Shown here: positions 11,949 to 62,625 of the stretch, piece after piece | Numbering within the stretch: position 1 is the stretch's first letter | How the letters are laid out: every line of letters starts with the position of its first letter | IMG/VR virus record: IMGVR_UViG_3300020810_001156 | Location: 188,604-252,603 of that record | Length of the DNA stretch: 64,000 nt | Reading direction: 5' to 3' (one strand) | Translations under genes and position numbers: made by a program | Notes under the pieces: generated by a model | The model's input: the letters and a program-made list of their open reading frames with translations, nothing else | The model's database searches: none | Told to the model about the DNA's origin: nothing

Positions 11949-11949
11949 G

Positions 11950-13193: not shown

Positions 13194-13197
13194 AAAT

Positions 13198-14612: not shown

Positions 14613-15220
14613 TGAATAAAATAAAATTTGATATTGGTGCTAATAGTGGAAGTGATACTAGAAGAATGGCTTCGGATGGTTCTATTGTTTACGCATTTGA
14701 ACCAACACATGAATTATTAATGAATCATCTCTGGCCACTTTCTAATCAGAATCCAAATATAAAAGTTATACCATTTGCGGTTGATGTTAAAAACTCATTC
14801 CAAACATTCAATATTTCTGCAAATAGAGATTGGGGTTGTAGTAGTTTATATGAGTTTTCCGATGATATAGAGAAGAAATGGCCAAACAGACCCGATTTCA
14901 AAAAAACTCATTCTTATGAAGTTCCTACAATAACTTTATATGATTTTTGTAATTTGTATAACATAGATAGGATTGATATGTTACACATAGATGCACAGGG
15001 TAATGATTTTAATGTTCTATTGAGTTTAAAAGACAAAATATCAATAGTTAAAGAAGGGGTGGTTGAAGCATCTGATAAAGTTGATTTATACAGTGGAGCT
15101 ACCAATAGAATAGAATACATAAGATATTTTTTAATATCGAATGGATTTAAGATTGTAAAAGAAACACCTAACGATGTTGTAGGTGCCGAAGTTAATATAA
15201 GGTTTATAAAAAATGATTAA
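14612..15220 (+). CDS. FkbM-family methyltransferase
   Basis: DIGANSG, AFEP, HIDAQGND. Confidence 0.88.
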   Translation: MNKIKFDIGANSGSDTRRMASDGSIVYAFEPTHELLMNHLWPLSNQNPNIKVIPFAVDVKNSFQTFNISANRDWGCSSLYEFSDDIEKKWPNRPDFKKTHSYEVPTITLYDFCNLYNIDRIDMLHIDAQGNDFNVLLSLKDKISIVKEGVVEASDKVDLYSGATNRIEYIRYFLISNGFKIVKETPNDVVGAEVNIRFIKND

Positions 15221-36314: not shown

Positions 36315-36375
36315 AAATAATTCACAAAAGGCTTGTATATGTCAAAAATTATACATATATTAGTACTGTAATTGA
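36313..36375 (+). repeat. Promoter-bearing direct repeat, copy 2
   Basis: CTTG-N20-TATATTAG followed by TACTGTAATTGA. Confidence 0.8.
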
Positions 36376-36404
36376 GAGATAAGTTAAAACCTAAAACAAA
36401 TAAT

Positions 36405-38522: not shown

Positions 38523-38544
38523 ATGAAAAATAAATGAGAAAAGG

Positions 38545-38606
38545 CTTGCATGTTTCAAATCTTTTTCTTATATTAGTATAGTAATTGAGTGGGAGAGAAA
38601 CTCCCA
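38545..38606 (+). promoter_or_regulatory. Promoter (third variant of the repeat) with a 5' stem-loop
   Basis: CTTG-N20-TATATTAG, GTAATTGA, then TGGGAG-AGAAA-CTCCCA. Confidence 0.65.
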
Positions 38607-38635
38607 AAGTTTAAAACCCTAAAATAATAAAAGTT

Positions 38636-39847
38636 ATGACAGATTTTAAAATTGGTTTTGTAAAGAATGAAGTTTATAAGGTGGAGGCCTTTGGTAACTC
38701 ATTTAAACTGATTGATACTAAAGGTACGAAAGTTGGTACTTTGGGTATCGGAACTGGTACTCGTAAGAGCGCCTATGAGAATGGAGAAGCTCTCCAAGCT
38801 TATGTTCAAAAGAATGGTAAGAAAGTTTACCGAAAAGTTGGTATGGATGTTTACAACAACTTAGTTGCTCCGATGGCTACCGAAAATGGTGGTGTTCAAT
38901 TCGAAGATAAATCGGACCATACGGCTATTAAAGATTTTATCCACAAAGGTTCAGTAAACCTTAAACCAACTGAGTTGGTGATGACTGAACTAAAGTGGAA
39001 GTATCTCATCAGAAGTGCGGTGAGAGCTAAGAATATTATGATGACAGGACCTGCTGGTTGTGGTAAAACTATGGCCGCTAAAGCATTGGTTAAAGCACTT
39101 GACCGTCCTGATTTTTACTTCAACTTAGGAGCAACGCAAGACCCGCGAGCTACCCTAATTGGTAACACACAATTCGATTCTAAGAATGGTACTTACTTCT
39201 CAGAATCATCATTCATCAAAGCAATCAAAACTCCAAACGCAGTTATCCTATTGGATGAGTTGAGTAGAGCTCACCCTGATGCTTGGAACATTTTGATGAC
39301 CGTTTTAGATGGTGGACAACGATACATCCGATTGGATGAAGCAGAAGGTTCACCAATTGTGAAAGTTGCTGAAGGAGTTACCTTCATCGCTACGGCTAAC
39401 ATTGGTAATGAATATACATCGACCAGAGTTATTGACCGAGCGATTCTTGACCGATTCGTTACCATTGAAATGGATGTTCTAAATGATGAGCAAGAATTTG
39501 GTTTGTTGAAGTTTATGTTCCCTGAGGTGAACGAAGAAGATTTAAAAGCTGTAGCGGAAATCGCACACCATACTCGAACTCAATCGATGAGTGATAGTGG
39601 TAAAGTTACAGCAATGGTTTCCACTCGTGCTAGTGTTGAGATGGCTGGATTGATTTATGATGGTTTCGATTTATTCGAAGCAGCTGAGATTTCAATCTTC
39701 CCATTCTTCTCTAACGATGGTGGAGTTGATTCTGAAAGAACTTACATTAAGCAGTTAGTTCAGAAGTATGTGAAAGATGAGGGTGAAGCTCTCTTCAATG
39801 AGCAGGAAACCGAAACGAATTCGGAAGATGAGATTCCGATGTTTTAG
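38636..39847 (+). CDS. MoxR/CbbQ/NorQ-like AAA+ ATPase
   Basis: GPAGCGKT, LLDELSR, ATAN, D.A..DRF, STR. Confidence 0.9.
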   Translation: MTDFKIGFVKNEVYKVEAFGNSFKLIDTKGTKVGTLGIGTGTRKSAYENGEALQAYVQKNGKKVYRKVGMDVYNNLVAPMATENGGVQFEDKSDHTAIKDFIHKGSVNLKPTELVMTELKWKYLIRSAVRAKNIMMTGPAGCGKTMAAKALVKALDRPDFYFNLGATQDPRATLIGNTQFDSKNGTYFSESSFIKAIKTPNAVILLDELSRAHPDAWNILMTVLDGGQRYIRLDEAEGSPIVKVAEGVTFIATANIGNEYTSTRVIDRAILDRFVTIEMDVLNDEQEFGLLKFMFPEVNEEDLKAVAEIAHHTRTQSMSDSGKVTAMVSTRASVEMAGLIYDGFDLFEAAEISIFPFFSNDGGVDSERTYIKQLVQKYVKDEGEALFNEQETETNSEDEIPMF

Positions 39848-44468: not shown

Positions 44469-46445
44469 ATGAAAAAAATATTGGTAATTATGTTGAGTAT
44501 GGTGAGTATTTCCCTATCTGCTCAACAAAGTGATACGACTATCGTATTAGATGATGTAGTAATAACTGCTACTAGAAGTGAGATAAGTTTGGAAGATTCA
44601 CCCGTACCAACGGAAGTGATTGGAAAGAAAGAGATTGAAGAACTAAATTTAATTACGATGCAAGACCTCCTTAATTTAAAAGGATTTGTTGCACCGATGA
44701 AAAGTGGAGGTTTCCAATTAAGAGGATTATCTTCCGAATATGTTTTAGTAATGATTGATGGAGTTCCAATCGCAGGTAGAGAAAGTGGTGCATTAGATAT
44801 CTCGAATATCAACCTTGCAAATGTGGAAAGAGTTGAAATTGTAAAAGGTTCAATGTCTGCACTTTGGGGTAACCATGCAATTGGTGGTGTAATCAACATC
44901 ATTACAAAGAAGAGTGGAGAACCATCTATAATGTTGAATACACAATATGGAACAAACAACACATCATTAGTTGGATTAACTTCAACAGTGGGTAAAGATA
45001 AATTTAAGAACATATCTAAGATTACATTAGGAAGTTCAGATGGTTTTGATATCGACCCATTAACTTATGGTCAAAATCAATTACCATTTAAGTTGTTGAA
45101 TATTACCAATAGAACTACTTACGATGATGGAACGAACCAATACTCATTAGGATTAACTCACTTAGGAAAAACATCCGAAGGTGAAACTGTAACTGAAACA
45201 AATACTCAGGGGCAATTAGTACCAGTTGATGAGGTAAACGAATCCCAAAACTTTATTGTTGATTTGAACTACAAAAGAAGTTTTGGTAAATATGTGAGTG
45301 AGATTAAAGTATCTAATTCAAACTTCAGTAACTCAAACAAATCTTCTTTTGAATATTTCGGACAACAAGTAGTTCAGTTAGATGAGAGTGACCAAAACAT
45401 TTTCCAACCTGAGATGATTAACAATTACAATTGGAATTCTAAAAACTCAACTACATTTGGATTTGGTTATAGAGGACACGATTACGATACTGAAAGATAT
45501 GGTGGTGATAAATCTCTAAACTCTTACTTTGGATATGTTCAACATTATCTAAACTTAGATAAACTAAATTTAGTAGTTGGTGGTAGATACGATAACTATT
45601 CAGATTTTGGAAACAACTTCTCACCAAAAGTATCTGCAACTTATGATTTGGGGAAATTCAAATTGAGTTCATCGGTTGGTTATGGATTCAGAGTACCTGA
45701 TTTTAGAACCTTATACATTAACTATGGTGGATTCTCATCTGGGTATTGGGTATTAGGTTCGTATAACATTGAAGAACAAATCAATTTTTATTCTCAACAA
45801 AATCTAATTGCATTTGTATCTTATGGATTAGAAGATATTACTCAACTAAGTCCTGAAACTTCTATCTCATATGATTTTGGTGTATCGTATAAATTAAATG
45901 AGAGTAGTAAAGTAGGATTAAACTTATTTAGAACCAATACAACTGATTTGATTGAATCAGTTCTTGCTGGAATGTTTGTAAACCAAACTTTACTTTTTGG
46001 ATACACAAATATCTCAGAAGCAACATTTACAGGTTTAGAGTTTGAAACTTTGATTCAAAAAGATAGATTTAGATTTGATGGTTCTTATCAGTATTTAGAA
46101 ACTGAAGCAAATAAAGCAGATGGAACTGAATTCTTTTTGGGTGAAAGACCTAAACATTTAGTTAACCTTGCAACTACTTATACATTGAAGAATGGTTTAT
46201 CATTAACTTTAAATGGAGTTCATAAATCAGAGTACTTCTTTAGAGATGTTGATAGAAGTGGAACTCAGGACGCAAATGAGTTTGTACCTTCTCACACATT
46301 GTTGAATACTTTGATAAGTTCTCCTGTTGTTAAGAATATGACAGTTGGTGTTGGTGTTAACAATATTTTAGATTTTACTAATGTAGAGTATCTAAAACAA
46401 CAAAATGGTAGAACCATTTTTGGAAAAGTAACTTATAAATTTTAA
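44469..46445 (+). CDS. TonB-dependent outer-membrane receptor (CirA/BtuB/HmuR-like)
   Basis: Signal peptide, VVITATR, plug IDGVP...VERVEIVKGS.SALWG..AIGGVINIITK, beta-barrel, C-terminal YKF. Confidence 0.92.
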   Translation: MKKILVIMLSMVSISLSAQQSDTTIVLDDVVITATRSEISLEDSPVPTEVIGKKEIEELNLITMQDLLNLKGFVAPMKSGGFQLRGLSSEYVLVMIDGVPIAGRESGALDISNINLANVERVEIVKGSMSALWGNHAIGGVINIITKKSGEPSIMLNTQYGTNNTSLVGLTSTVGKDKFKNISKITLGSSDGFDIDPLTYGQNQLPFKLLNITNRTTYDDGTNQYSLGLTHLGKTSEGETVTETNTQGQLVPVDEVNESQNFIVDLNYKRSFGKYVSEIKVSNSNFSNSNKSSFEYFGQQVVQLDESDQNIFQPEMINNYNWNSKNSTTFGFGYRGHDYDTERYGGDKSLNSYFGYVQHYLNLDKLNLVVGGRYDNYSDFGNNFSPKVSATYDLGKFKLSSSVGYGFRVPDFRTLYINYGGFSSGYWVLGSYNIEEQINFYSQQNLIAFVSYGLEDITQLSPETSISYDFGVSYKLNESSKVGLNLFRTNTTDLIESVLAGMFVNQTLLFGYTNISEATFTGLEFETLIQKDRFRFDGSYQYLETEANKADGTEFFLGERPKHLVNLATTYTLKNGLSLTLNGVHKSEYFFRDVDRSGTQDANEFVPSHTLLNTLISSPVVKNMTVGVGVNNILDFTNVEYLKQQNGRTIFGKVTYKF

Positions 46446-46452
46446 AAACTAT

Positions 46453-47619
46453 ATGAAAAAGATGATTTTATGTGGATTGATGTTGCTGATGGGTACATCA
46501 TCTTTTGCTTCTCACCTATTGGGTGGGTACATTCAAACAACTCAAAGGAATTCAAGTGATACTGTTGATGTGGTAGTAACTTTATTTACTGACCCTCAAG
46601 GAATTGGTAATCCAACTTCTATTTCTTTAGCGGAATGGAAATTGGTAAATGGTTTTTATCAAACCAATGGTAACTTTACACTTTCTCAACAACTAACTGG
46701 AAGTTGGCAAGGTGTAAATGTGTATGTGTATAGTGGTATTAGAATATTAAGTAGTGGTGATTATCGTTTCATCTACACCAATTGTTGTAGAGGAATGTTG
46801 AGTAACGCATCATCTGCAATGAATAGTAACTTTACTATTGCAATGGATTACAAAAAATCACTTCTACCAAACTCAGCACCTATCATTCTCAACCCACTTC
46901 CAATCAATTGGGTAAATGGTGATACTGCACAATCAATTCTATTTGCGGTAGATGTAGATGGTGATTCGGTAATGGTTGAAAAGGATGATGCTATTAACCA
47001 ACACTCAAACAATACATTTGTACCACTTTCACCATTTACTCAATTAGGTAGTTATGGTAGTTATTATGTGGATGTAAATGGAACAATTGAATGGGCTCCA
47101 AATACCAATGGAACATTTGGTACTGGATATAAAGTAAGTGAAATCAGAAATGGACAAGTTATTGGAGTGAATAGAATTCAACAAGTCTATATGGTTCAAC
47201 CTGGTTCAACACCAAATGTACCAAACTTAAACCCAATGATTACAGCCGATTTGGTAAATGGTGATTCACTTCAATATACCACATCCATTTCAAACGCAAC
47301 TTCAACTGAGTTGATTATTCCAAATGTAGATGTAACTCAAACTTCAGATTCAACTTGGACTTTGAATAATCTTCAAATGGGAACATACAATGGAGTATTG
47401 AGAGCTAGTAGTAACTCATCAAATATGGATTATTACATTACTTTAGTGGTAACATCTACAATCGGAATCGAAGAGAATGTTTCAGATATGGATACTTCTT
47501 ACGAAGTTTACGATTGGACTGGAAAATACATTGGTAAAGATGTAAATTGGGAGCAATTAAATGGTTTGTATATAATTAAACATAGTAACGGAACAATAGA
47601 AAAAATCTACAATATATGA
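46453..47619 (+). CDS. Secreted protein with a T9SS-type C-terminal domain
   Basis: Signal peptide + ASHLLGG, NCCR, NSAP, DVDGDS; tail IGIEE..YDWTGK..GLYIIK..GTIEK. Confidence 0.65.
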   Translation: MKKMILCGLMLLMGTSSFASHLLGGYIQTTQRNSSDTVDVVVTLFTDPQGIGNPTSISLAEWKLVNGFYQTNGNFTLSQQLTGSWQGVNVYVYSGIRILSSGDYRFIYTNCCRGMLSNASSAMNSNFTIAMDYKKSLLPNSAPIILNPLPINWVNGDTAQSILFAVDVDGDSVMVEKDDAINQHSNNTFVPLSPFTQLGSYGSYYVDVNGTIEWAPNTNGTFGTGYKVSEIRNGQVIGVNRIQQVYMVQPGSTPNVPNLNPMITADLVNGDSLQYTTSISNATSTELIIPNVDVTQTSDSTWTLNNLQMGTYNGVLRASSNSSNMDYYITLVVTSTIGIEENVSDMDTSYEVYDWTGKYIGKDVNWEQLNGLYIIKHSNGTIEKIYNI

Positions 47620-48473
47620 AGATATTAGTAACTGGCGGGAACGGCTTTATCGGTTCAAATCTAATTAAGAAACTATTATCTGAAGGACACGAAGTGGTAT
47701 CTTTGGATGATTTATCAACTGGGTTAAAAGAGTACGAAGTTGAAGGATGTAATTATGTTTATGGAGATATTGAAAATCTTCTGTATTGGAAAGGTGAATC
47801 TTTTGATTTATGTTATCATCTCGCTGCGTTAGCTAGAATCGTTCCATCATTTGAGGACCCGATGGAAACCTTTAGAGTAGACACTCAAGGTGTAATGGTA
47901 GTTGCTGAATGGGCTAGACAAAATAATGTAAAGGTTGTATATAGTGGTTCATCATCTCGTTGGTGTAATCCCGAAACTTCACCATATGCAACTTGTAAAA
48001 AATTAGGTGAAGATATTCTCAAAATGTATCGAACTGCTTATGGATGTGATTTTGAAATCGCAAGATTCTATAATGTATATGGACCAAATGAATTGGTTGA
48101 TGGACAGTGGGCAGCTGTGATTGGTATTTGGAGAAAACAAATCGAAGAAGGTAAACCAATCACAATTATATCAGATGGAGAACAAAGAAGAGATTTTACT
48201 CATGTAGATGATATTTGTGATGCTCTATATAAGATTGGTACAAGTGATAAAAAGCATGAAGATGCTTGGGAATTGGGTACAGGTATGAATTACTCAATTA
48301 ATGAAGTATTTGATTTCTTCCAAGAATCATTTGGTGATTTGGAAAAAGTACATCTGCCTGATGTACCAGGAAATTATAGACAAACTCTTAGAGAGAATGA
48401 TGATACTTTGGAGAGATTGGAATGGGCACCCAAAGATAGTTTAAGAGATTATATTTTATCTCTTAACAAGTAA
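47616..48473 (+). CDS. NAD-dependent sugar epimerase/dehydratase
   Basis: TGGNGFIG, YATCK, RFYNVYGP, RDFTHV. Confidence 0.9.
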   Translation: MKILVTGGNGFIGSNLIKKLLSEGHEVVSLDDLSTGLKEYEVEGCNYVYGDIENLLYWKGESFDLCYHLAALARIVPSFEDPMETFRVDTQGVMVVAEWARQNNVKVVYSGSSSRWCNPETSPYATCKKLGEDILKMYRTAYGCDFEIARFYNVYGPNELVDGQWAAVIGIWRKQIEEGKPITIISDGEQRRDFTHVDDICDALYKIGTSDKKHEDAWELGTGMNYSINEVFDFFQESFGDLEKVHLPDVPGNYRQTLRENDDTLERLEWAPKDSLRDYILSLNK

Positions 48474-48505
48474 AAAGAGGTTTAACGAATAAAATATTAT
48501 CGGTT

Positions 48506-48700
48506 ATGAAATATGGTATATTGTTTATCATTGTTATTTTATTTTCTGGTTTTTCACAAACTGAAAGTGAGTGGGAAAAGAAATACAACTCGGTGAAGGA
48601 AGAAAGAGATATGTACAAAAAGACATCAGAGATGTTGTTGAAAAATTGGAAAGAGTGTGAAGAAAAAGTAACAAAGATTATTAGTGAGCAAGTTAATTAA
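48506..48700 (+). CDS. Small secreted/membrane coiled-coil protein
   Basis: N-terminal hydrophobic stretch. Confidence 0.4.
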   Translation: MKYGILFIIVILFSGFSQTESEWEKKYNSVKEERDMYKKTSEMLLKNWKECEEKVTKIISEQVN

Positions 48701-49238
48701 TTTATTTGGAGGACCAGGCATAGGAAAATCAGGCATATCAGCTGGATTAACTTATGAATTAAAGAAAAGACATATTAGTTGTAATAACCCATATGAGTTT
48801 CCAAAGAGATTAGCATGGGATAACAACATACCAGCGATACAAGACCAATTGTATGTATTCGCTAACCAACATAGAGGAATCGCAGAATCCTTTGGTAAAG
48901 TAGATTATATCGTTATTGATTCACCAATTCTATTTTCTACAATTTATCACACATATTATACTGAAGGGTATCCTGCTGAGTTTTATGGTGAAGAGTTTCA
49001 CAAATTTGTGATTCATCTTCACAAACAATACACAAGTATCAATATTCTTTTGGAAAGAGGTGATACAATTCACAATGATGATGAAAGATTCCAAAATCTA
49101 AAACAATCATTGGAGATAGATGATTTGTGTAAAAAAATATTAAAAGATAATGATGAAACTTATCACACAATCAAAGTAGATGAGTTTACTGTTGAAAAGA
49201 TTTTAACATTATTGGATTTAAATAATGAAAAAAGATAA
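48684..49238 (+). CDS. P-loop NTPase (NadR/AAA_28-like)
   Basis: INLFGGPGIGKS, IDSP, R.Q. Confidence 0.75.
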   Translation: MSKLINLFGGPGIGKSGISAGLTYELKKRHISCNNPYEFPKRLAWDNNIPAIQDQLYVFANQHRGIAESFGKVDYIVIDSPILFSTIYHTYYTEGYPAEFYGEEFHKFVIHLHKQYTSINILLERGDTIHNDDERFQNLKQSLEIDDLCKKILKDNDETYHTIKVDEFTVEKILTLLDLNNEKR

Positions 49239-49430
49239 ACGCTGGAATAGGGAAATGAAAAGGTATCGTATCATTGAACACAAACATCGGGATAAATCTG
49301 TGTTCATTGTTGAGTGGAATGATAGATGGTTTTTAGGATTGTGGGGAAGATGGCATGGTAAATTTCAGAGTTTAAAAATTGAAGAAGCTATTTCTAAAAT
49401 ACAAAGATTAGTACACATTAAAATAAATAA

Positions 49431-50333
49431 ATGAGAATAGTAGTTACAGGCGGTTGTGGGTTTATTGGTTCATCTTTTGTAAATCTTATAAATAAAGTTC
49501 CAAATACTGAAATAGTTGTTATAGATAAATTAACCTATGCAGCTAATCCATTTTTAATTTCCAAAGATATACCTCTTATTAAAAAAGATATTTGTGATAT
49601 CACTTTAGATGATATTGGATATGCTGATTATATTGTAAACTTTGCTGCTGAATCTCATGTTGATAATTCAATCTCAAATGGATTACCTTTTGTGAAAACT
49701 AATGTAGAAGGTACATTCAATATGTTAGAGGTTGCTAGAAAAATTCCTAACCTAAAGAAGTTCATTCAAATATCTACTGATGAGGTTTATGGTGATATGG
49801 AAAGTAGAAATATTATGGAAGCTAATGAAAACACATCATTAGAACCATCCTCTTATTATTCAGCTACTAAAGCAGCAGCTGACCATTTAGTTGAATCTGC
49901 TGGTAGAACTTATGGTTTACCTTATTTAATTACGAGAACTTGTAACAATTATGGTGTAAATCAACACCACGAAAAATTCTTACCTACAATAGCTAAATCA
50001 ATCAAAGAAGATAAACCAATTCCTCTTTATGGAGATGGTAAACAAATGAGAGAGTGGATTTGGGTTGAAGATAATGTTCAATTGATTTATGATTTGATGA
50101 TATCACAAAACGGAATATGGAATATTGGTAGTGGAGATACTTGGACTAATAGAAGTATCGTTCAACAAATTGGAGTGATTCTAAATAAAAAAGTAAAGTT
50201 AGAGCATGTTGAAGATAGATTAGGACATGATAGAAGGTACTCAATAAATTTCAGTAAATTGATGCACTTCAAAAATAGCTATAACATAACCACAAAAAAT
50301 TTAGAAAAATTTCTTACAGAAACATTTGGATAA
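49431..50333 (+). CDS. rfbB: dTDP-glucose 4,6-dehydratase
   Basis: DKLTYA, FAAESHVD, STDEVYG, YSATK, NNYG, DRLGHDRRY. Confidence 0.92.
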   Translation: MRIVVTGGCGFIGSSFVNLINKVPNTEIVVIDKLTYAANPFLISKDIPLIKKDICDITLDDIGYADYIVNFAAESHVDNSISNGLPFVKTNVEGTFNMLEVARKIPNLKKFIQISTDEVYGDMESRNIMEANENTSLEPSSYYSATKAAADHLVESAGRTYGLPYLITRTCNNYGVNQHHEKFLPTIAKSIKEDKPIPLYGDGKQMREWIWVEDNVQLIYDLMISQNGIWNIGSGDTWTNRSIVQQIGVILNKKVKLEHVEDRLGHDRRYSINFSKLMHFKNSYNITTKNLEKFLTETFG

Positions 50334-51942: not shown

Positions 51943-52524
51943 GTGAAAAACCTAATAGTAATAGGACATCCTAACAAAGATTCATTTTGCTATAATGGTA
52001 TTATGAAAACCATTAAACGGGAACTTCGTAAACACAATGAACCAATCAAAGTTATTGATTTGTATAGAGATTCCTTTGCGAGACCAAGAACCGATTTGGT
52101 TAAAAGATATCAAGAATTAGTAACTTGGTCAGATAGAATTTATTTTATCTCACCAGTTTGGTGGTTTAGATTAACTCCACGAATGGAAGTATTCTTTGAT
52201 GAAGTATTCACACCAGGATTTGCTTATAACTTTGTAAACATTACAAAATTATATGCTTATCCTAAACCACATTTAAGTGATAAAAAAGTTAGAACTTATA
52301 TCACACATGGAGCACCTTCATTACCAGTTAGAACTTTGTATCTTAACTCAGTCAAACTAAGATTGGTGTTGGGTGTATTTACTTTTGTATTTGGTTGGAA
52401 GTTGGGTAGATGGAGAAAAACTAAACAATTTTGGTCAGTACCATTTGTATCTGATGAAAAGAGAAGAAAGTACTTACAACGAGTTAAAAAAGATGTTAGA
52501 AAAGATTTAAAGTTTGAAATATGA
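51943..52524 (+). CDS. Flavodoxin-fold NAD(P)H:quinone oxidoreductase (MdaB-like)
   Basis: GHPNKDSF, IDLY, PVWW, D.VF.PGFAY. Confidence 0.85.
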   Translation: MKNLIVIGHPNKDSFCYNGIMKTIKRELRKHNEPIKVIDLYRDSFARPRTDLVKRYQELVTWSDRIYFISPVWWFRLTPRMEVFFDEVFTPGFAYNFVNITKLYAYPKPHLSDKKVRTYITHGAPSLPVRTLYLNSVKLRLVLGVFTFVFGWKLGRWRKTKQFWSVPFVSDEKRRKYLQRVKKDVRKDLKFEI

Positions 52525-53565: not shown

Positions 53566-54393
53566 ATGAGTAACATAGAAAAACAATATCAAGGTATCCT
53601 CAGAAAGTTGGTACTTTATGGAAAAGAAAAGGGAGATAGAACTGGAACTGGAACTCTATCTTACTTTGGGGAACAAATCAGACACAATATGGCTGATGGA
53701 TTTCCACTTCTTACTACAAAGAAGATGGCTATTAAATCTGTAATGACTGAACTAAAATGGTTTCTAAAAGGAAGAACTGATATCCAATATTTGAGAGATA
53801 ATAATTGTAAAATTTGGGATGGTGATTATGAAAAGAGTGGTAGAACCGATGGAACATTAGGGCCAATCTATGGTAAGCAATGGAGAGATTGGGATGGTAG
53901 ACAAGAACGGGATGGTTCTTATGATATGAGCCTTGACCAAATTGCTAATCTGATATTTCTATTGAAAAGAAATCCAGACTCAAGGCGTTTAATGGTTAAT
54001 GCTTGGAATGTAGGTGAGTTAAATGAAATGGTTCTACCACCTTGCCACTACGGATTCCAATGTTATGTATCTGAAGGTAAACTATCTCTAATGTGGAATC
54101 AGAGAAGTGTAGATACGTTCTTAGGTTTACCATTTAACATTGCAAGTTATGGAACACTACTCCTTTTATTATGTGAAGAGACAGGGTTACAACCTGGTGA
54201 ACTGATTGGGAACTTAGGTGATGTACATTTATATAAGAATCACATTCAACAAGCAAAAGAACAAATTGTAAGAGAACCATATAAGTTACCAACTATTGAA
54301 CTTTCAAATGTGGATATACTTAAAGGAGAGTTCGATTACGAAATCAAAGATTATGAATATCACCCAAGTATAAAGGCACCATTAAGTAACTAA
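53566..54393 (+). CDS. thyA: Thymidylate synthase
   Basis: DRTGTGT, FPLLTTKK, LPPCH, QRSVD..LGLPFN, D.H.Y.NH. Confidence 0.96.
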   Translation: MSNIEKQYQGILRKLVLYGKEKGDRTGTGTLSYFGEQIRHNMADGFPLLTTKKMAIKSVMTELKWFLKGRTDIQYLRDNNCKIWDGDYEKSGRTDGTLGPIYGKQWRDWDGRQERDGSYDMSLDQIANLIFLLKRNPDSRRLMVNAWNVGELNEMVLPPCHYGFQCYVSEGKLSLMWNQRSVDTFLGLPFNIASYGTLLLLLCEETGLQPGELIGNLGDVHLYKNHIQQAKEQIVREPYKLPTIELSNVDILKGEFDYEIKDYEYHPSIKAPLSN

Positions 54394-54603
54394 TATGGGT
54401 TTAGAACTAAAATCAATTGATGATAATAATATAGAGGTTTACTCTAATTTAAAATTGGCAGGAACTATTATAAGACCAGAAATACCTACTCATCCTGATG
54501 GAACCTTTAAGTGGTTCTTTAAACCCAATAAAGATTGTGGTTGTGTTTGGACAGATGTAAGTTTATTAGAATTGGGAACTATAATTAAAAAGATGAATCA
54601 AAA

Positions 54604-54786
54604 ATGAAAAAATTCAAAAGAAGTAAATTAAATAGAAAATTAAGTGGAATTTGTGGAGGATTGGGTGATTACTTTGATACTGACCCATTACTTTGGAGAT
54701 TATTATTTGTATTACTATTCTTTATCCCCGCAATTCCAATTTTTATTCTATACATCATAACAACATTAATAACTGAATCCGAATGA
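54604..54786 (+). CDS. pspC: PspC-domain membrane protein
   Basis: RS..NR.LSGICGGLGDYF..DP...RLLFV. Confidence 0.85.
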   Translation: MKKFKRSKLNRKLSGICGGLGDYFDTDPLLWRLLFVLLFFIPAIPIFILYIITTLITESE

Positions 54787-55298
54787 AACCATTAAAAGAA
54801 GCAACGCACGATAAACACAAAGAGGCTGAAAGAATGTTGTTCAACACTAAAATGTTCAAAGGTGAATTAAGTGTAGAACAATATACAAAGTATCTTCTTT
54901 CACAATTAGAAATCTTCTCAACTATTGAAGAAAACTTTGAAATGCCACACAATGGATTGAGAAGAAAAGAAGCAGTTATGAAAGATTTAAAAGGAATGGG
55001 TGTAAGACAATTAGAAATCTCAGACCCTGCTACTTTAAATTATACTACATATCTGAGAGGATTATCACAAGAGGATATTAATCCACATATTTATCTTAAC
55101 TATCTTGCGATTATGTTTGGTGGACAGATGATGAAAAAAAATACACCCGGTCCTGGTAATATGTATGATTTCGATAACATGATGGAGTCAATGCAATCAG
55201 TTAGAAATATACAAAAAGATGAGTGGGCAGATGAAGTGAATCGTGGATTTGATTTTATGATTGATATATTTAAAGAGTTAGAAAAATGTATAAACTAA
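54783..55298 (+). CDS. Heme oxygenase (Ho1/HemO-like)
   Basis: LKEAT.DKH..AE, L.R......DL, H.Y..YLA.MFGGQ. Confidence 0.88.
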   Translation: MKPLKEATHDKHKEAERMLFNTKMFKGELSVEQYTKYLLSQLEIFSTIEENFEMPHNGLRRKEAVMKDLKGMGVRQLEISDPATLNYTTYLRGLSQEDINPHIYLNYLAIMFGGQMMKKNTPGPGNMYDFDNMMESMQSVRNIQKDEWADEVNRGFDFMIDIFKELEKCIN

Positions 55299-55957
55299 AA
55301 GATAGAATATTCCATCATTCAGAAAAGTTCAAAAATCTAATTGAACAACAAGAGGGTGTTCAGTTAATTGATACTGATGATTATGGTTGGGAAAACTATC
55401 GTTATGAAAATGATAGATTCAGACTTGCCCATGTTGAACGATATTCTCATATGGGATTGGAGGTTGTACACATAACTTGTTTTCCAAGAGAAAACTCAAA
55501 GATGCCTGTTTTTGGATTTGATGTAGTTGGATATCAAAACGATGAAAAAGAAATGTCAAAAATTAGTGGAGTGTTTATTGATTGGTCACCAATCTTAACT
55601 CACGATAAATGGCACGATACTCAATGGAACAAAGATAGAAAGTTACCTTATTGGGCAACTGTATTTTCAGAAGATTTTATAGCAGTAAGACCTACTGAAG
55701 ATGAATACGAAAAAGTATTCGAAGTTGGGTTTGATGCATTCGAAAGATGGTTAGAAAGATTAAATACCGATGAGGATTTAACTGATGATGTAAGTGAGAT
55801 TGAACAAATTATTGAAAGGCAAAACACTTATTGTGAACATCAAGCATCAAACAAACGAACAATGGGTGCTTTAACTGCTAACATTGGAGAGGAAAAAGCA
55901 AGACATTTTATGACAGAAGTTCTATTCCCTAAGATAAAAACTGACAATTTGTCATAA
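55286..55957 (+). CDS. Ferredoxin-dependent bilin reductase (PcyA/PcyX-like)
   Basis: FRLAHVE, VVHITCFP, PVFGFDVV, DWSP, R.LP.W..VFS, Q..YC..Q..N..T...L, FM.EVLFP. Confidence 0.85.
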   Translation: MYKLKDRIFHHSEKFKNLIEQQEGVQLIDTDDYGWENYRYENDRFRLAHVERYSHMGLEVVHITCFPRENSKMPVFGFDVVGYQNDEKEMSKISGVFIDWSPILTHDKWHDTQWNKDRKLPYWATVFSEDFIAVRPTEDEYEKVFEVGFDAFERWLERLNTDEDLTDDVSEIEQIIERQNTYCEHQASNKRTMGALTANIGEEKARHFMTEVLFPKIKTDNLS

Positions 55958-55967: not shown

Positions 55968-55999
55968 TTTGGAATTGTGGAATAAATTTCGTATATTAG
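55968..55999 (+). promoter_or_regulatory. Bacteroidota-type promoter upstream of the groES/groEL unit
   Basis: TTTG-N20-TATATTAG. Confidence 0.7.
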
Positions 56000-56004
56000 T
56001 AGAT

Positions 56005-56268
56005 ATGTTTAACGCAGAAGAAATTAAAACAGTAGAAGGTTTCAAAAGACATTTTGGTGAACCTAAAGAAGGAATGTTAATCGATTTAACTCAAGAGTTC
56101 ATTGAAGCATACCATAGACATGGGGTTGACCCATTTGAATTGGTAGATGGATTTGGATTGGATTGGGTTCAACTAATAATGAATTACAATGAAGATGTAG
56201 AAGAATATGAATTATGCGCAATCTTCAGAGATTTAATAAATGATTATATAAAAATAAAAACAAAGTAA
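56005..56268 (+). CDS. Hypothetical protein with a UVR-like tail
   Basis: EEYELCAIFRD; the track start at 55969 lies inside the promoter, so ATG 56005 is preferred. Confidence 0.55.
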   Translation: MFNAEEIKTVEGFKRHFGEPKEGMLIDLTQEFIEAYHRHGVDPFELVDGFGLDWVQLIMNYNEDVEEYELCAIFRDLINDYIKIKTK

Positions 56269-56277: not shown

Positions 56278-56568
56278 ATGGCAAATATTGGTAAACCCCT
56301 TGCAGATAGGGTTCTTCTTAAATTAGAAGATGTATCTGAATCAAAATCAAGTGGTGGTATTATACTCAACACAACCACACAAACCATTCAAACTGCGGAA
56401 GTAGTTGAAGTATCCGATGGATTTATTGGAAACAATGGTGAATTAATCAAATTAAGTGTAAATAGAGGTGATAAAGTTCTCATCAATAACGGAGCTGGGC
56501 AAAAGGTAAAGTTAGATGGAGTAGATTATCACTTAGTTAGAGAATCAGAAATTTTAATGGTAGTATAA
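56278..56568 (+). CDS. groES: Co-chaperonin GroES
   Basis: PLADRV, SGGIIL, GDKVL, RESEIL. Confidence 0.92.
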   Translation: MANIGKPLADRVLLKLEDVSESKSSGGIILNTTTQTIQTAEVVEVSDGFIGNNGELIKLSVNRGDKVLINNGAGQKVKLDGVDYHLVRESEILMVV

Positions 56569-58197
<1,629 letters not shown>

Positions 58198-58224: not shown

Positions 58225-58256
58225 AAAAGGGAGGACGGTTGGTTCTCCCTTTTTTT
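58225..58256 (+). terminator. Rho-independent terminator
   Basis: AAAAGGGAG...CTCCCTTTTTTT. Confidence 0.75.
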
Positions 58257-59684: not shown

Positions 59685-60515
59685 ATGAGAAGAATAATCA
59701 TTTTAATACTTTTAGGATTTCTATTAACATCTTGTGGAAGTATGTATCAATTTTCCACAATCAATCACACACCAGAATATATTGGTGATGTGAGAGTTGA
59801 TAAGATTGAAAATAGAATGGATTTGAATTGGAAGTTAAGAACTGATAATCAATTCAGATGGAATTTTGCTCAATATGCACAGAACCAACCTTTGAGTTGG
59901 TATTACGATAACTCTTGGGAGTTAGGATTATATACGAACCCATACTTTACTACTTGGGATTTTTACTTCAATAGAACTCAACTTTGGTGGGATTGGAGTT
60001 TCAACTATCCTTACAATTGGGGATGGAACCGTTGGTATCCATTTGGATACAATAGATGGGGTTGGAACTATGGATTCAGAAACAATTGGGCATGGGGATA
60101 TAATCCTTACAGATGGAATAGTGGATTTGTTCATAATCCTCAACCAATAAGAAATAGAAATGTTGTTGTGGTGAATGGTAGAAGAGGTTCTAACAACACA
60201 AACATTATAATAAACAGAGGCAGGTCGAATAATTCGACCACCAATAATTCCAATGTTAGAGTTAGAAGGTATGATAACAAAGATAGAATTGTACCTCGTA
60301 GAGATTATAACGATATAAAGAGTAGAGTTAGAACACCTATAAACAATAACTCAACACCTACGAGAAATTATAATGTACCAAGACCTAATAACAATAACAA
60401 TATAAGAAGAACTCCACCACCGCCTCCAACAAGACCTGTGGTTAGACCAAATGTAAGTAGAGGTTCAAATGTAGGTAGAAGTTCATCTCAGGTTATCAAA
60501 AGAAATAATGAGTAA
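59685..60515 (+). CDS. Lipoprotein with W/Y/N-rich and R/N/P-rich low-complexity regions
   Basis: Lipobox LTSC; WGWN repeats; disordered tail. Confidence 0.65.
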   Translation: MRRIIILILLGFLLTSCGSMYQFSTINHTPEYIGDVRVDKIENRMDLNWKLRTDNQFRWNFAQYAQNQPLSWYYDNSWELGLYTNPYFTTWDFYFNRTQLWWDWSFNYPYNWGWNRWYPFGYNRWGWNYGFRNNWAWGYNPYRWNSGFVHNPQPIRNRNVVVVNGRRGSNNTNIIINRGRSNNSTTNNSNVRVRRYDNKDRIVPRRDYNDIKSRVRTPINNNSTPTRNYNVPRPNNNNNIRRTPPPPPTRPVVRPNVSRGSNVGRSSSQVIKRNNE

Positions 60516-62625
60516 TCTAAAACTAAACATACCAAAGGATGTAATCAAGATACATAAGGCATTCAAAAAGAATGGTAAAAAACTTTATGTAGTTGGTGGT
60601 GCGGTTAGAGATGCCATCTTAGGTAAATCACCTAAAGATTTCGATTTAGCAACTGATGCAAAACCTGAAGAAGTTGAGAAGATAGCAAAAGATAATGGAA
60701 TATCATCTAAACCACTTGGAAAGGCATTTGGTGTTGTTTCACTTTTTATTAATAATGAAGAATATGAGATTGCAACTTTCAGAAAAGATATCGGAAAAGG
60801 TAGGAGACCTTCATCGGTAGATTACACAGATATACATGGTGATGTTAAGAGAAGGGATTTAACTGTAAATGCCTTATTCTATGACATCGATAGAAAAGAG
60901 ATTGTAGATTTAGTTGGTGGTATAGAAGATTTGAAAAAGAAAAACATCAGAACTGTTGGTAAAGCAAAAGAAAGATTTGATGAGGACCCGTTAAGAAAGT
61001 TAAGAGCATTAAGATTTTGGACAAGATTGGGTGGTAAGTTAGATAAAGAGTTATTAGATGCTTTACAAAATGACCCATCAATAAAAGGAGTTAGTTCTGA
61101 AAGAATTAGAGATGAATTCTTAAAATCAATCAAATCATCAAAGAATACAAAAGAGTATATGGAGATGTGTGATAAGATTGGATTTACTTCTCAGATACTT
61201 CCAAATCTAAAAGTATCAAAACCATATCCTAAAACAAACGATTATATTTTATTCTTAGCATGGGTATTAAGAAAGAACTCACCAGTTGTACTATCTAAAA
61301 TTCTAAATAAGATAAACTATACAAATGATGAAAGAGATGAAATAGTTTATCTAAATACACTTCAAGATTTCAAACCTGAAAATGTTTTAGTTTATAAAAA
61401 AGGGCAGAGAAAAGCAGAAGATAGTAGAATAATTACCTTTGGTAAAATGATTGGTAAAGATTTTACTAAGTTTGTAAAGTTCAAAACATCAGTAACTGGT
61501 AAGGATGTTCCATCAGATATTAAAGGACCTGAAATTGGATTGTGGATAGCAAGTAAAGAAAAGGAAAACTATCTAAACGAAGGTTTGAAAGAATTAGGAA
61601 TCACCGATTTCAAATCACTCTTTAAGAAAATGCCATCTGATTTACAAAAGAGAGTGTATAACTTAAAGAACTTTGGACAGAGAATTGATAAACACCCTGA
61701 AGGGAATGTACTTAAACATACAATCACAGTTGTAAATCGTTCAATCAAAGAAGATGATATCGATATTGCAATCGCAGCAATGTTCCACGATATAGGAAAA
61801 GATGAAACTGCTGGTATCCATCCAAAGAAAGGACATATTACACATTTTGGACACGAAAAAGTATCAGCTAATTTAGTTAAGAAATATAAAAATTGGATTG
61901 AATCAGTTGGTGGTAACACTGCCAATGTTTATTACATTGTAAAGAATCATATGAGATTCAAACAATTAGATAATATGAGAATCCAAAAGGTAATGAAGTT
62001 AAAGGCATTCAGAGCATTTGATAAGTTAGGTAAATTCTCTAAACACGATAGAAGTGGGTTAGATATAAGTGAAGATAAAATTCCTGGCGGATTAGCTGGT
62101 GAGATGAATATCTACGATATTGCAAATATGCACAAAGTTGATATTGATGATTTAAATAAGGAATTACAAATGGGTATTAAAGTTGAAATGGAACACACTT
62201 CAGATAGAGAGATAGCAAAAGAAATTGCATTAGACCATTTATATGAGGACCCAAAATATTACACTAAACTTGCCGATATTGAAGAAAGTAAAGGTAAATT
62301 AAGACCAGCTGATAAGTTAAGAAGAAAAAGAGCCATGGCTGGTAAGAAAGCTGCTATTCAAAGAAGGAAGTTAAGAACAATGAAGAGGAAAAAACCTCTT
62401 GCTAAACTAAAAAAGATTGCATATAAAATGGCATATTTACAAGTTTATAAACAATTTATGGAGGATTTATTTCCTGGTATGAATAAAAGTGATTTATCCA
62501 TTCAACAGGCAAAGATAGTTCATAAGAATGTATTAAGAAAGAAAGGTAGAGTTTTAAAACGAGCTAAGTTCAAATTCTTACCAGCTCTAAGAGCAAAAGA
62601 AGCAGAAAAATTTAAAAAGGATTAA
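60508..62625 (+). CDS. cca: CCA-adding/polyA polymerase-family nucleotidyltransferase fused to HD, DUF5661-like and basic modules
   Basis: VGGAVRD, DFDLAT, RRDLTVNA, RFDEDPLR.LR; HPEG..HT..HDIGK; GIKVEMEH..IALDHL.E.P.YY. Confidence 0.8.
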   Translation: MSNLKLNIPKDVIKIHKAFKKNGKKLYVVGGAVRDAILGKSPKDFDLATDAKPEEVEKIAKDNGISSKPLGKAFGVVSLFINNEEYEIATFRKDIGKGRRPSSVDYTDIHGDVKRRDLTVNALFYDIDRKEIVDLVGGIEDLKKKNIRTVGKAKERFDEDPLRKLRALRFWTRLGGKLDKELLDALQNDPSIKGVSSERIRDEFLKSIKSSKNTKEYMEMCDKIGFTSQILPNLKVSKPYPKTNDYILFLAWVLRKNSPVVLSKILNKINYTNDERDEIVYLNTLQDFKPENVLVYKKGQRKAEDSRIITFGKMIGKDFTKFVKFKTSVTGKDVPSDIKGPEIGLWIASKEKENYLNEGLKELGITDFKSLFKKMPSDLQKRVYNLKNFGQRIDKHPEGNVLKHTITVVNRSIKEDDIDIAIAAMFHDIGKDETAGIHPKKGHITHFGHEKVSANLVKKYKNWIESVGGNTANVYYIVKNHMRFKQLDNMRIQKVMKLKAFRAFDKLGKFSKHDRSGLDISEDKIPGGLAGEMNIYDIANMHKVDIDDLNKELQMGIKVEMEHTSDREIAKEIALDHLYEDPKYYTKLADIEESKGKLRPADKLRRKRAMAGKKAAIQRRKLRTMKRKKPLAKLKKIAYKMAYLQVYKQFMEDLFPGMNKSDLSIQQAKIVHKNVLRKKGRVLKRAKFKFLPALRAKEAEKFKKD

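What the first reader, a model, noticed from the sequence alone, without database searches (positions are those of the whole stretch)
54604..55957. Heme oxygenase + bilin reductase in a phage of an apparently non-cyanobacterial host, coupled to pspC
Seen: pspC, heme oxygenase and the FDBR gene overlap in one unit after thyA; no photosynthesis genes are in the window. Established: ho1-pcyA/pebS pairs occur in cyanophages and hemO-pcyX in other marine phages. Inference: with Bacteroidota-type signals all around, bilin synthesis here cannot serve phycobilisomes. It may serve iron release, redox or antioxidant control, or an unknown bilin-binding protein.
Basis: partly seen in the sequence, partly recalled or inferred. 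Interest (0 to 1): 0.7.

Follow-up and report, generated by a model that had tools for sequence, protein, structure and literature searches.

The report
Haem-to-bilin gene pair in Bacteroidota phage
A 253-kb estuarine phage that most likely infects Bacteroidota, not cyanobacteria, carries a two-gene cassette predicted to turn host haem into a reduced bilin; this is a new branch of a phage gene pair already known, and its purpose is still unknown.

Summary
pspC (54604-54786), a 171-aa haem oxygenase (54783-55298) and a 223-aa ferredoxin-dependent bilin reductase, FDBR (55286-55957), overlap in one tight unit after thyA, followed by GroES/GroEL and a terminator.

The window is the last 64 kb of a 252,603-bp T4-core myovirus. 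The genome has no psbA, phycobiliprotein, GAF, CpeT, 2Fe-2S ferredoxin or AlaS gene.

Host signals point to Bacteroidota:
- Shine-Dalgarno motifs are at background level.
- Most secreted proteins have Gln after the signal peptide (the Bacteroidetes Q-rule).
- One receptor is SusC-like.
- A Flavobacterium phage gives the same values; cyanophage and pelagiphage controls do not.

hemO-FDBR is the conserved unit. hemO sits directly upstream in about 42 related viral loci, and the two gene trees recover the same clades. pspC is lineage-specific and absent from two close relatives.

The FDBR forms its own well-supported clade beside PcyX, not inside it. It has the PcyA-type Glu-His-Asp triad, so phycocyanobilin is predicted rather than phycoerythrobilin. 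The haem oxygenases of this clade lack the distal Asp.

Verdict: a new variant of the known phage hemO-pcyX/pcyA cassette. Its physiological role (iron release, stress relief or a bilin ligand) is unresolved.

The parts
51943..52524 (+). Flavodoxin_2-fold NAD(P)H oxidoreductase-like gene. It is the first gene after a 228-nt gap and may be the first gene of the transcription unit. A role as electron donor is speculative.
   Evidence: Pfam PF02525, 6e-21. NCBIfam gives only weak NAD(P)H oxidoreductase and KefF matches. It is present 2-3 kb upstream of the cassette in L024, L025, L027 and L002-L004.
53566..54393 (+). thyA, thymidylate synthase
   Evidence: PF00303, 7e-95. It lies upstream of the cassette in all near relatives.
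54395..54607 (+). 70-aa ORF of unknown function. Its stop overlaps the pspC start (ATGA).
   Evidence: No Pfam, PHROG or NCBIfam match. Sequence read.
54604..54786 (+). pspC-domain small membrane protein (60 aa). It is a lineage-specific neighbour and not part of the conserved cassette.
   Evidence: PF04024, 2e-18. NCBIfam PspC scores 47.6 bits, below the cut-off of 104. It is present in L025, L027-L031 and L002-L006 and absent from L024 and L026. All more distant loci lack it too, apart from L050, which has a distant copy (34% identity) about 3.7 kb downstream of its FDBR.
54783..55298 (+). hemO: a compact (171 aa) canonical-fold haem oxygenase. It has the proximal His12, Glu16, Tyr104 and Gly113-Gly114. 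The distal Asp is replaced by Ile110.
   Evidence: PF01126, 1e-12. PDB haem oxygenases match down to 4e-6. The AF2 model has pLDDT 96.7. Foldseek against HmuO and HO-1 gives TM 0.80-0.85 over the whole length. Residue census.
55286..55957 (+). FDBR of the PcyA/PcyX (AX-type) branch, with the PcyA-type triad Glu51-His62-Asp79. It is predicted to reduce biliverdin IXalpha by four electrons, most likely to phycocyanobilin.
   Evidence: PF05996, 3e-23. The best PDB matches are PcyX 5OWG at 1e-19, then PcyA at 3e-15. Alignment, tree and residue census.
55969..56268 (+). Small helical protein of unknown function (the true start is probably the ATG at 56005). It carries an invariant C-terminal motif containing Cys83, Arg87 and Asp88.
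   Evidence: Conserved just upstream of GroES in near relatives. No family match. The AF2 model has pLDDT 85 and no significant structural match.
56278..56568 (+). GroES (Cpn10)
   Evidence: PF00166, 1e-20. Its position is conserved in relatives.
56572..58197 (+). GroEL (Cpn60)
   Evidence: 48-55% identical to chaperonins encoded in Bacteroides, Flavobacterium and Vibrio phage records. Listed as Cpn60_TCP1 in relatives.
58225..58253 (+). Terminator-like hairpin (12-bp stem followed by a T-run) that ends the unit

Best explanation
This is a phage-borne two-enzyme pathway that dismantles host haem.

Mechanism:
1. The compact haem oxygenase opens haem b to biliverdin IXalpha, releasing Fe2+ and CO.
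2. The FDBR is translationally coupled to it by a 13-nt overlap. It reduces the biliverdin by four electrons taken from a host ferredoxin, because the phage encodes none.
3. The enzyme has the PcyA-type Glu-His-Asp triad rather than the Asp-His-Asp of PcyX, so the predicted product is phycocyanobilin, not phycoerythrobilin.

The cassette sits in a ~253-kb T4-core jumbo myovirus lineage from estuarine and marine water. Its host is most likely a member of the Bacteroidota, probably Flavobacteriia, so it cannot feed phycobilisomes.

Inferred role: haem breakdown during infection that frees iron for the phage's iron enzymes and removes pro-oxidant haem and biliverdin. The FDBR would pull haem oxygenase turnover by consuming its product. 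pspC and GroES/GroEL are co-transcribed neighbours in this lineage only.

What is shown: gene identities, folds, key residues, synteny, clade placement and host-type signals. What is inferred: the product, the electron donor and the physiological role.

Confidence by part: enzymology about 0.8, Bacteroidota host about 0.85, PCB as product about 0.55, iron or stress role about 0.35.
For: Identity and fold of the two enzymes.

Catalytic residues: Glu51, His62 and Asp79 are invariant in all 23 clade representatives. The PcyX clade has Asp (6 of 6) and cyanophage PcyA has Glu (3 of 3). Published work states that the Glu76-His88-Asp105 triad is required for PCB synthesis, and that PcyX has Asp at that site and makes PEB (PMC13446030). 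A phage FDBR lacking that Asp (CB_2) was shown to make PCB (PMC11480375).

The cassette as a unit:
- hemO lies directly upstream of, and usually overlapping, the FDBR in about 42 of 46 IMG/VR loci. The other four have no upstream sequence held or too little of it.
- In 3 of 3 informative look-ups that started from distant HemO relatives, an FDBR lay next to it.
- The HemO and FDBR trees recover the same clades.

Host:
- The SD motif occurs upstream of 12% of genes against 9% at random positions.
- 10 of 21 signal-like N-termini have [AGS]Q at the cleavage position, against 8% of other proteins. That is nearly all the non-lipoprotein signal peptides, matching the Bacteroidetes Q-rule (PMC5837995).
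- The positive control, Flavobacterium phage immuto, gives 5% SD and 7 of 11. Mel-JY01, P-SSM2 and Mosig give 22-42% SD and 1-2 Q each.
- One receptor has a SusC/RagA-like N-terminus.
- TAnnTTTG is enriched about 3-fold on the coding strand of intergenic DNA.
- The nearest isolate by capsid and terminase is a Flavobacterium phage.
- All contigs of this FDBR clade are SD-poor (7-9%), against 47% for PcyX contigs of equal GC.

Other points: the genome has no Fer2, AlaS, psbA, phycobiliprotein, GAF or CpeT gene. Fer2 is found in the Bacteroides control genome. RNA-seq contigs from four estuarine metatranscriptomes cover the unit without mismatches.
Against: - No enzyme assay exists for this clade, and FDBR regiospecificity can flip with single substitutions (PMC13446030).
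- The closest solved structure by sequence is PcyX, not PcyA. At the PcyA Asp220 site most of the clade has Pro, as PcyX does, while the window's own protein has Lys190.
- All 13 haem oxygenases of this clade replace the distal Asp with Ile, Leu or Met. That Asp organises the oxygen-activating water network in HO-1 and HmuO, so activity or chemistry could differ.
- The host is inferred from sequence signals only.
- By capsid and terminase the phage is as close to 'Microcystis phage Mel-JY01' (52-56% identity) as to the Flavobacterium phage.
- Iron release alone would need only hemO. The near-obligate FDBR partner could equally mean that the reduced bilin itself is the point.
- RNA-library coverage may include carried-over DNA.
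- A HemO-FDBR complex prediction gave no verdict.
Confidence: 0.5

Rival explanations
1. The FDBR is functionally a PcyX. It makes phycoerythrobilin, like the enzymes of pelagimyophage-type contigs, and this cassette is simply a divergent copy of that system.
For: The best solved-structure match is PcyX 5OWG at 1e-19, against 3e-15 for PcyA. The only cultured phage with both genes is Pelagibacter phage Mosig. The hemO-then-FDBR overlap architecture is the same. The window clade groups with PcyX and alphaproteobacterial PcyA, apart from cyanophage PcyA.
Against: The window clade (99/99 support) and the PcyX clade (100/99) are separate. The diagnostic PcyX Asp is Glu in 23 of 23 members. PcyX-typical Met and Cys near the catalytic His are Val and Thr here. 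A phage FDBR lacking that Asp makes PCB (PMC11480375).
Confidence: 0.25
2. The reduced bilin is the purpose rather than a by-product. It would be the ligand of a still unrecognised host or phage protein (a sensor, regulator or light- or redox-responsive factor), and iron release would be incidental.
For: hemO was never seen without an FDBR, whether the search started from the FDBR or from the HemO side. Residues that determine regiospecificity are fixed differently in different clades. A small protein with an invariant Cys-x3-Arg-Asp motif lies just downstream in the near lineage.
Against: The genome has no phycobiliprotein or BBAG-type globin, GAF or CpeT-lyase match. The downstream ORF has no significant structural match, globin included. 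It follows GroES rather than the FDBR across relatives, and it is missing from more distant cassettes.
Confidence: 0.25
3. The host is a cyanobacterium after all, and the cassette supports phycobilisome or phytochrome chromophore supply, as in cyanophages.
For: The capsid protein and terminase are 52-56% identical to those of a phage deposited as 'Microcystis phage Mel-JY01'. Cyanobacteria also use few SD sites. GC of 33% is compatible with Prochlorococcus.
Against: Q-rule signal peptides, a SusC-like receptor and two TonB-dependent receptors are present. The genome has no psbA or phycobiliprotein gene. Mel-JY01 and P-SSM2 do not share the Q-rule or SD values, while the Flavobacterium phage does.
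Confidence: 0.05
4. The 'haem oxygenase' of this clade is not a normal biliverdin-forming enzyme. With the distal Asp lost, it may cleave haem with another regiochemistry, act on another tetrapyrrole, or mainly bind or deliver haem. The FDBR substrate would then differ too.
For: The distal Asp is replaced by a hydrophobic residue in 13 of 13 clade members, but kept in 5 of 5 PcyX-clade partners, with Asp or Glu in 4 of 4 alpha-like-clade partners. From general knowledge, mutating this Asp in HO-1 and HmuO impairs oxygen activation.
Against: The proximal His, Glu16, Tyr104 and Gly-Gly are conserved. The canonical fold is complete. The enzyme is always partnered with an FDBR that keeps all biliverdin-binding residues. 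To my recollection, unverified here, some active bacterial HemO enzymes also lack this Asp.
Confidence: 0.1

Closest known systems
PhiHemO-PcyX cassette of pelagimyophage-type marine phages (Pelagibacter phage Mosig; PcyX_EBK42635, PDB 5OWG)
   Same: It has a short haem oxygenase directly upstream of, and overlapping, an FDBR of the PcyA/PcyX branch. It occurs in a phage of a non-cyanobacterial host. The catalytic His and Asp are the same, and no phycobiliprotein context is present.
   Different: FDBR identity is only 31% and HemO identity 27%. The clades are separate and well supported. Glu replaces the PcyX Asp. The HemO lacks the distal Asp that PcyX-clade partners keep. The contigs are SD-poor with Bacteroidota-type signals, against 47% SD for PcyX contigs. 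The genome is ~253 kb rather than ~141 kb.
vHemO-vPcyA(-vAlaS) of freshwater phage CB_2 (PMC11480375)
   Same: It is a phage FDBR next to hemO that lacks the PcyX Asp. That enzyme was shown to make PCB in a phage of a heterotroph, which is the same predicted chemistry.
   Different: No alaS-type gene is present here. The habitat is estuarine or marine and the predicted host phylum differs.
Cyanophage ho1 / pcyA / pebS auxiliary genes
   Same: These are phage-borne haem oxygenase and FDBR genes. The PcyA Glu-His-Asp triad is shared.
   Different: Identity to cyanophage PcyA is 21-29%. Cyanophage PcyA branches outside the group that holds the window clade. The host is not cyanobacterial, the genome has no photosynthesis genes, and pebS is only a distant outgroup.
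Alphaproteobacterial PcyA of the AX clade (Bradyrhizobium ORS278 type; here Falsiroseomonas)
   Same: It belongs to the same broad group in the tree and has Glu at the key site.
   Different: Identity is 24%. It is cellular, not viral. FDBRs were found in only 3 of 401 sampled genomes of the Falsiroseomonas genome's class, Alphaproteobacteria. A pattern scan of 185,579 species genomes found no cellular copy of the window clade.

Membership tests
Ferredoxin-dependent bilin reductase (Pfam PF05996) | Profile match above the curated cut-off | tested here: met
   83.2 bits against a cut-off of 31. The genome-wide scan gives a single hit.
Ferredoxin-dependent bilin reductase (PcyA/PcyX branch) | Catalytic His and Asp (PcyA His88/Asp105; PcyX His69/Asp86) | tested here: met
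   His62 and Asp79 are invariant across the clade and align to these residues.
PcyX (phage phycoerythrobilin synthase) | Asp at the site of PcyX Asp55 (PcyA Glu76) | tested here: not met
   Glu51 in the window protein and in 23 of 23 clade representatives. The PcyX clade has Asp in 6 of 6.
PcyX (phage phycoerythrobilin synthase) | Falls inside the PcyX clade | tested here: not met
   The window clade (99/99) and the PcyX clade (100/99) are separate starred clades.
PcyX (phage phycoerythrobilin synthase) | Product is phycoerythrobilin | not testable with these tools
   This needs an enzyme assay.
PcyA (phycocyanobilin:ferredoxin oxidoreductase) | Glu76-His88-Asp105 catalytic triad | tested here: met
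   Glu51, His62 and Asp79. The triad is defined in PMC13446030.
PcyA (phycocyanobilin:ferredoxin oxidoreductase) | NCBIfam equivalog score | tested here: not met
   NF002760 is the best family but scores 92.9 bits against a cut-off of 206.
PcyA (phycocyanobilin:ferredoxin oxidoreductase) | Product is phycocyanobilin | not testable with these tools
   Predicted from the triad and from the CB_2 precedent. No assay was possible.
Canonical haem oxygenase (Pfam PF01126) | Profile match above the cut-off, and the HO fold | tested here: met
   48.5 bits against 23. The AF2 model has pLDDT 96.7, with TM 0.80-0.85 to HmuO and HO-1 over the whole length.
Canonical haem oxygenase (Pfam PF01126) | Proximal His and distal-helix Gly-Gly | tested here: met
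   His12 is invariant. Gly113 and Gly114 are present in 43 and 42 of 45 sequences.
Canonical haem oxygenase (Pfam PF01126) | Distal Asp (HO-1 Asp140 / HmuO Asp136) | tested here: not met
   Ile110 in the window protein; Ile, Leu or Met in 13 of 13 clade members.
PspC envelope-stress protein | PspC domain, and full-length equivalog | tested here: inconclusive
   The Pfam domain is met (66 bits against 25). The NCBIfam equivalog is not met (47.6 against 104): this is a 60-aa protein consisting of the domain only.
A pspC-hemO-FDBR 'system' | pspC conserved next to the cassette | tested here: not met
   pspC is adjacent only in the near lineage. It is absent from L024 and L026. More distant loci have no adjacent copy; L050 has a distant one about 3.7 kb downstream of its FDBR.
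Cyanophage bilin auxiliary genes | Cyanobacterial host and photosynthesis gene context | tested here: not met
   The genome has no Photo_RC, Phycobilisome or CpeT match. Host signals are of Bacteroidota type, with controls.

The most novel reading that the evidence does not exclude
A Bacteroidota-phage-specific haem-to-phycocyanobilin pathway exists whose product is used by an unrecognised bilin-binding protein. One candidate is the small conserved neighbour with the invariant Cys-x3-Arg-Asp motif; a host factor is another. This would give a non-photosynthetic virocell a bilin-based sensor or regulator. It would be paired with a haem oxygenase that works without the canonical distal Asp.
Probability: 0.1. 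Interest if true: 0.8.

Novelty: new variant of a known kind. Interest (0 to 1): 0.45.

Why it matters
Why phages of heterotrophs carry bilin synthesis genes has been an open question since PcyX was found. This lineage extends the cassette to abundant, large phages of a second major marine heterotroph phylum.

It also offers a natural experiment: the Glu-type clade against the Asp-type PcyX clade, and haem oxygenases with and without the distal Asp. That comparison can be tested directly by co-expression.

If the product is phycocyanobilin, then both bilin isomers are made by phages of non-photosynthetic hosts. That argues for a general role, such as iron, haem or redox management or a ligand, rather than light harvesting.

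Tried and rejected
- **HemO-FDBR complex prediction.** It gave no verdict, with one of three runs scoring high. It is not used as evidence either way.
- **Cellular relatives of the phage's BtuB/haem-like receptor.** The pattern scan found none, so the receptor could not be used for host assignment.
- **First FDBR alignment as a query.** It was too diverse for the genome scan. The clade-only alignment found only a 24%-identical alphaproteobacterial gene and a 2-kb MAG contig that falls in the PcyX clade.
- **Relatives of a virus record.** They cannot be drawn, and ENA/JGI contigs are not held for whole-record searches.
- **A link between haem uptake and the cassette.** The 658-aa receptor scores best against the B12 and haemin receptor families, but far below their cut-offs. 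It is shared only with the closest relatives and is absent from a complete 270-kb relative that carries the cassette. I dropped it as part of the system.
- **Type IX secretion tails.** The Atlas suggested Bacteroidota T9SS-tail proteins as look-alikes of the 388-aa neighbour of that receptor. Pfam Por_Secre_tail and CHU_C were not found.
- **The whole-window count of TAnnTTTG.** It is only mildly above chance. The signal appears only when restricted to intergenic DNA on the coding strand.
- **The 99-aa neighbour as a bilin-binding globin.** No structural support was found.
- **The phage GroEL as a host marker.** It is about equally similar (48-55%) to chaperonins from many phyla, so it does not discriminate hosts.
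Full report
**What is there.** The window is the last 64 kb of a 252,603-bp IMG/VR virus record that CheckV rates complete. GC is about 33%, and almost every gene lies on the + strand.

- pspC, 54604-54786 (PspC domain, 2e-18).
- A 171-aa haem oxygenase, 54783-55298 (PF01126, 1e-12).
- A 223-aa ferredoxin-dependent bilin reductase (FDBR), 55286-55957 (PF05996, 3e-23).

The genes are packed tightly. ATGA overlaps join orf70 to pspC and pspC to hemO, and 13 nt are shared by hemO and the FDBR. thyA lies upstream. A small ORF, GroES and GroEL lie downstream, followed by a strong terminator-like hairpin at 58225-58253.

The rest of the genome encodes a terminase, portal, gp23-type capsid protein, tail sheath, baseplate wedge, family-B DNA polymerase and ribonucleotide reductase, so it is a large myovirus.

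**The conserved unit is hemO-FDBR, not pspC-hemO-FDBR.** The FDBR has more than 190 relatives at the 90% cluster level in public metagenomes, some on contigs of 236-477 kb. In relatives down to 63% FDBR identity the order thyA ... pspC-hemO-FDBR-small ORFs-GroES-GroEL is kept.

A scan of IMG/VR found 46 loci with FDBR identity from 86% down to 28%. In about 42 of them a short hemO lies directly upstream, usually overlapping. The other four have no upstream sequence held or too little of it.

pspC behaves differently. It is present only in the near lineage. It is absent from two close relatives, L024 (86% FDBR identity) and L026 (77%). The more distant loci lack it too, except for one distant copy in L050, about 3.7 kb downstream of the FDBR.

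I also started from the other side, with three distant members of the short-HemO family (30-36% identical to the window protein). An FDBR lay next door each time. The HemO tree recovers the same viral clades as the FDBR tree with the minimum possible number of changes. The two genes therefore travel and diversify together.

**Which FDBR is it?** The best solved relative by sequence is PcyX (5OWG, 1e-19), followed by cyanobacterial PcyA (3e-15). PebS-type enzymes do not match. The only cultured phage carrying both genes is Pelagibacter phage Mosig, at 31% FDBR and 27% HemO identity, with the same overlapping architecture.

I built a maximum-likelihood tree of 52 sequences rooted on P-SSM2 PebS. 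The window protein falls in a 23-member clade with 99/99 support. That clade is separate from three others:
- the PcyX clade, which includes Mosig (100/99);
- a clade joining an alphaproteobacterial PcyA with four viral sequences;
- a further viral clade of 11 sequences.

These four lineages group together apart from cyanophage PcyA. Their branching order is unresolved, and two long-branch alphaproteobacterial sequences sit nearby.

At the site that separates the two known activities, the window clade has Glu in 23 of 23 members. So do cyanophage and alphaproteobacterial PcyA. The PcyX clade has Asp in 6 of 6. Published work states that PCB synthesis depends on the Glu76-His88-Asp105 triad, and that PcyX carries Asp at the first position and makes PEB (PMC13446030). 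A phage FDBR lacking that Asp (CB_2) was shown experimentally to make PCB (PMC11480375).

The window enzyme has Glu51, His62 and Asp79. I therefore predict phycocyanobilin, with moderate confidence, because FDBR specificity is known to shift with small changes.

**The haem oxygenase.** It belongs to a large family of compact proteins of about 170-190 aa, with 380 representatives at 50% identity. The AlphaFold model is very confident (pLDDT 96.7). It superposes on HmuO and HO-1 over its whole length with TM 0.80-0.85, so it is a trimmed but complete HO fold. The proximal His12, Glu16, Tyr104 and the distal Gly-Gly are conserved.

One feature is unexplained. The distal Asp of HO-1 and HmuO is Ile here, and Ile, Leu or Met in all 13 haem oxygenases of this clade. 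Partners in the PcyX clade keep Asp in 5 of 5, and partners in the alpha-like clade have Asp or Glu in 4 of 4.

**Host.** Several independent signals point to Bacteroidota.
- *Ribosome-binding sites.* Shine-Dalgarno cores occur upstream of 12% of genes against 9% at random positions, and the upstream regions are A-rich.
- *Signal peptides.* Of 21 signal-like N-termini, 10 end in [AGS]-Gln, against 8% in the same residue window of other proteins. After setting aside lipoproteins and membrane anchors, nearly all the rest follow this Bacteroidetes 'Q-rule' (PMC5837995).
- *Controls run the same way*:

| Phage (host) | SD frequency | [AGS]-Gln among signal-like N-termini |
|---|---|---|
| This phage | 12% | 10 of 21 |
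| Flavobacterium phage immuto | 5% | 7 of 11 |
| 'Microcystis phage' Mel-JY01 | 25% | 1 of 8 |
| Prochlorococcus phage P-SSM2 | 22% | 1 of 5 |
| Pelagibacter phage Mosig | 42% | 2 of 10 |

- *Receptors.* The phage encodes two TonB-dependent receptors. One has the carboxypeptidase-regulatory N-terminal domain, and its best NCBIfam match is SusC/RagA.
- *Promoter motif.* The Bacteroidota -7 motif TAnnTTTG is about three times denser on the coding strand of intergenic DNA than in coding DNA or on the opposite strand.
- *Nearest isolates.* By capsid protein and terminase the nearest isolates are Flavobacterium phage immuto and, equally close, Mel-JY01, at 52-56% identity.
- *Absent genes.* psbA and phycobiliprotein genes are absent.
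- *Whole clade.* Contigs of the window clade are all SD-poor (7-9%). The other FDBR clades show 28-47%, including PcyX contigs of the same GC content.

Together this suggests an FDBR lineage specific to phages of SD-poor, Bacteroidota-type hosts. The phage is found in salt-marsh and estuarine metagenomes. Contigs from four metatranscriptomes cover thyA, the orf70-pspC-hemO junction, hemO, the hemO-FDBR junction and the chaperonin genes without mismatches. That is consistent with transcription, although DNA carry-over is not excluded.

**How it probably works.** Two things are shown: the enzymes with intact cores, and their obligate pairing.

Three steps are inferred:
1. Host haem is opened to biliverdin IXalpha, releasing iron and CO.
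2. Biliverdin is reduced at once by four electrons to a phycobilin, most likely PCB.
3. The electrons come from a host ferredoxin. The phage has no Fer2 gene, and such domains are found in the Bacteroides control genome.

No AlaS gene accompanies the cassette, unlike some published versions. No known bilin-binding domain is encoded by the phage. The conserved 99-aa neighbour has an invariant Cys-x3-Arg-Asp motif but no recognisable fold.

The role I favour is haem clearance and iron mobilisation, with the FDBR pulling the oxygenase forward. In this lineage the cassette is co-transcribed with envelope-stress and chaperonin genes. I hold this loosely, because the near-obligate FDBR partner equally fits a role for the bilin itself.

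**Comparison and novelty.** hemO-pcyX cassettes in marine phages of heterotrophs, and a PCB-forming phage PcyA in a freshwater phage, are already described (PMC11480375). Four things are new here:
- a separate, well-supported and abundant clade with the PcyA-type triad;
- its association with jumbo phages that carry Bacteroidota-type signals;
- a partner haem oxygenase lineage that lacks the distal Asp;
- the lineage-specific placement between pspC and a chaperonin operon.

Two full-text searches found no paper linking bilin reductases to Bacteroidetes phages, and only one paper that mentions jumbo phages, haem oxygenase and marine together, which I did not read. I rate this a new variant of a known kind, of moderate interest.

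Noticed in passing
window 44469-47619: The phage encodes a TonB-dependent receptor (658 aa). Its best profile matches are the vitamin B12 and haemin receptor families, far below their cut-offs. A secreted 388-aa protein of unknown function follows it. The receptor is 85% identical in the two closest relatives but absent from a complete 270-kb relative that has the bilin cassette.
   Followed up: partly
G000:C1:20180-22900 (- strand; L009:180-2900): A second receptor of 906 aa has a carboxypeptidase-regulatory domain, a plug and a barrel, and its best NCBIfam match is SusC/RagA. It is one of only seven minus-strand ORFs called in the genome, and no SusD-like gene lies beside it.
   Followed up: partly
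window 123-1025: A protein matches the Druantia DruA domain (2e-19). Finding a defence-system domain inside a phage genome is unusual.
   Followed up: no
window 3933-19364 and 47616-50333: A long run of sugar-modifying genes: several glycosyltransferases, UDP-GlcNAc 2-epimerase, a DegT-type aminotransferase, a sulfotransferase-like gene, methyltransferases, a HAD-nucleotidyltransferase fusion and two NAD-dependent epimerases or dehydratases.
   Followed up: no
G000:C1:75880-84288, 110811-125297, 126219-139991, 142082-153682: Four giant ORFs of 2802, 4828, 4590 and 3866 aa, not annotated here. ARAGORN found no tRNA gene in the whole 253-kb genome.
   Followed up: no
window 55969-56268: The small helical protein between the FDBR and GroES has an invariant C-terminal motif around Cys83, Arg87 and Asp88. 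It has no family or fold match. Its start is probably the ATG at 56005.
   Followed up: yes
L002:2549-3611, L004:2374-3285; L003, L005, L006: thyA varies in relatives. It is 275 aa here and 336-367 aa in several relatives. On two contigs it is split into two or three pieces, which could reflect an insertion, an intron or an assembly fault.
   Followed up: no
window 36372-39847: A protein with a weak VWA-domain match (22 bits, just below the Pfam cut-off) is followed by a MoxR/CbbQ-type AAA ATPase.
   Followed up: no
window 60508-62625: A 705-aa protein combines a poly(A) polymerase/CCA-adding head domain, an HD domain and DUF5661.
   Followed up: no
PP395634.1 (L158, L160-L166): The phage deposited as 'Microcystis phage Mel-JY01' is as close to this phage in capsid protein and terminase (52-56%) as Flavobacterium phage immuto. 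It does not share the Q-rule or the very low SD frequency, and it has no FDBR.
   Followed up: partly
L023 (JABJFP010000320.1, 2118 bp): A 2-kb contig binned into a Methanobacteriota archaeon MAG carries an FDBR that falls in the phage PcyX clade. It is most likely a mis-binned phage fragment.
   Followed up: partly
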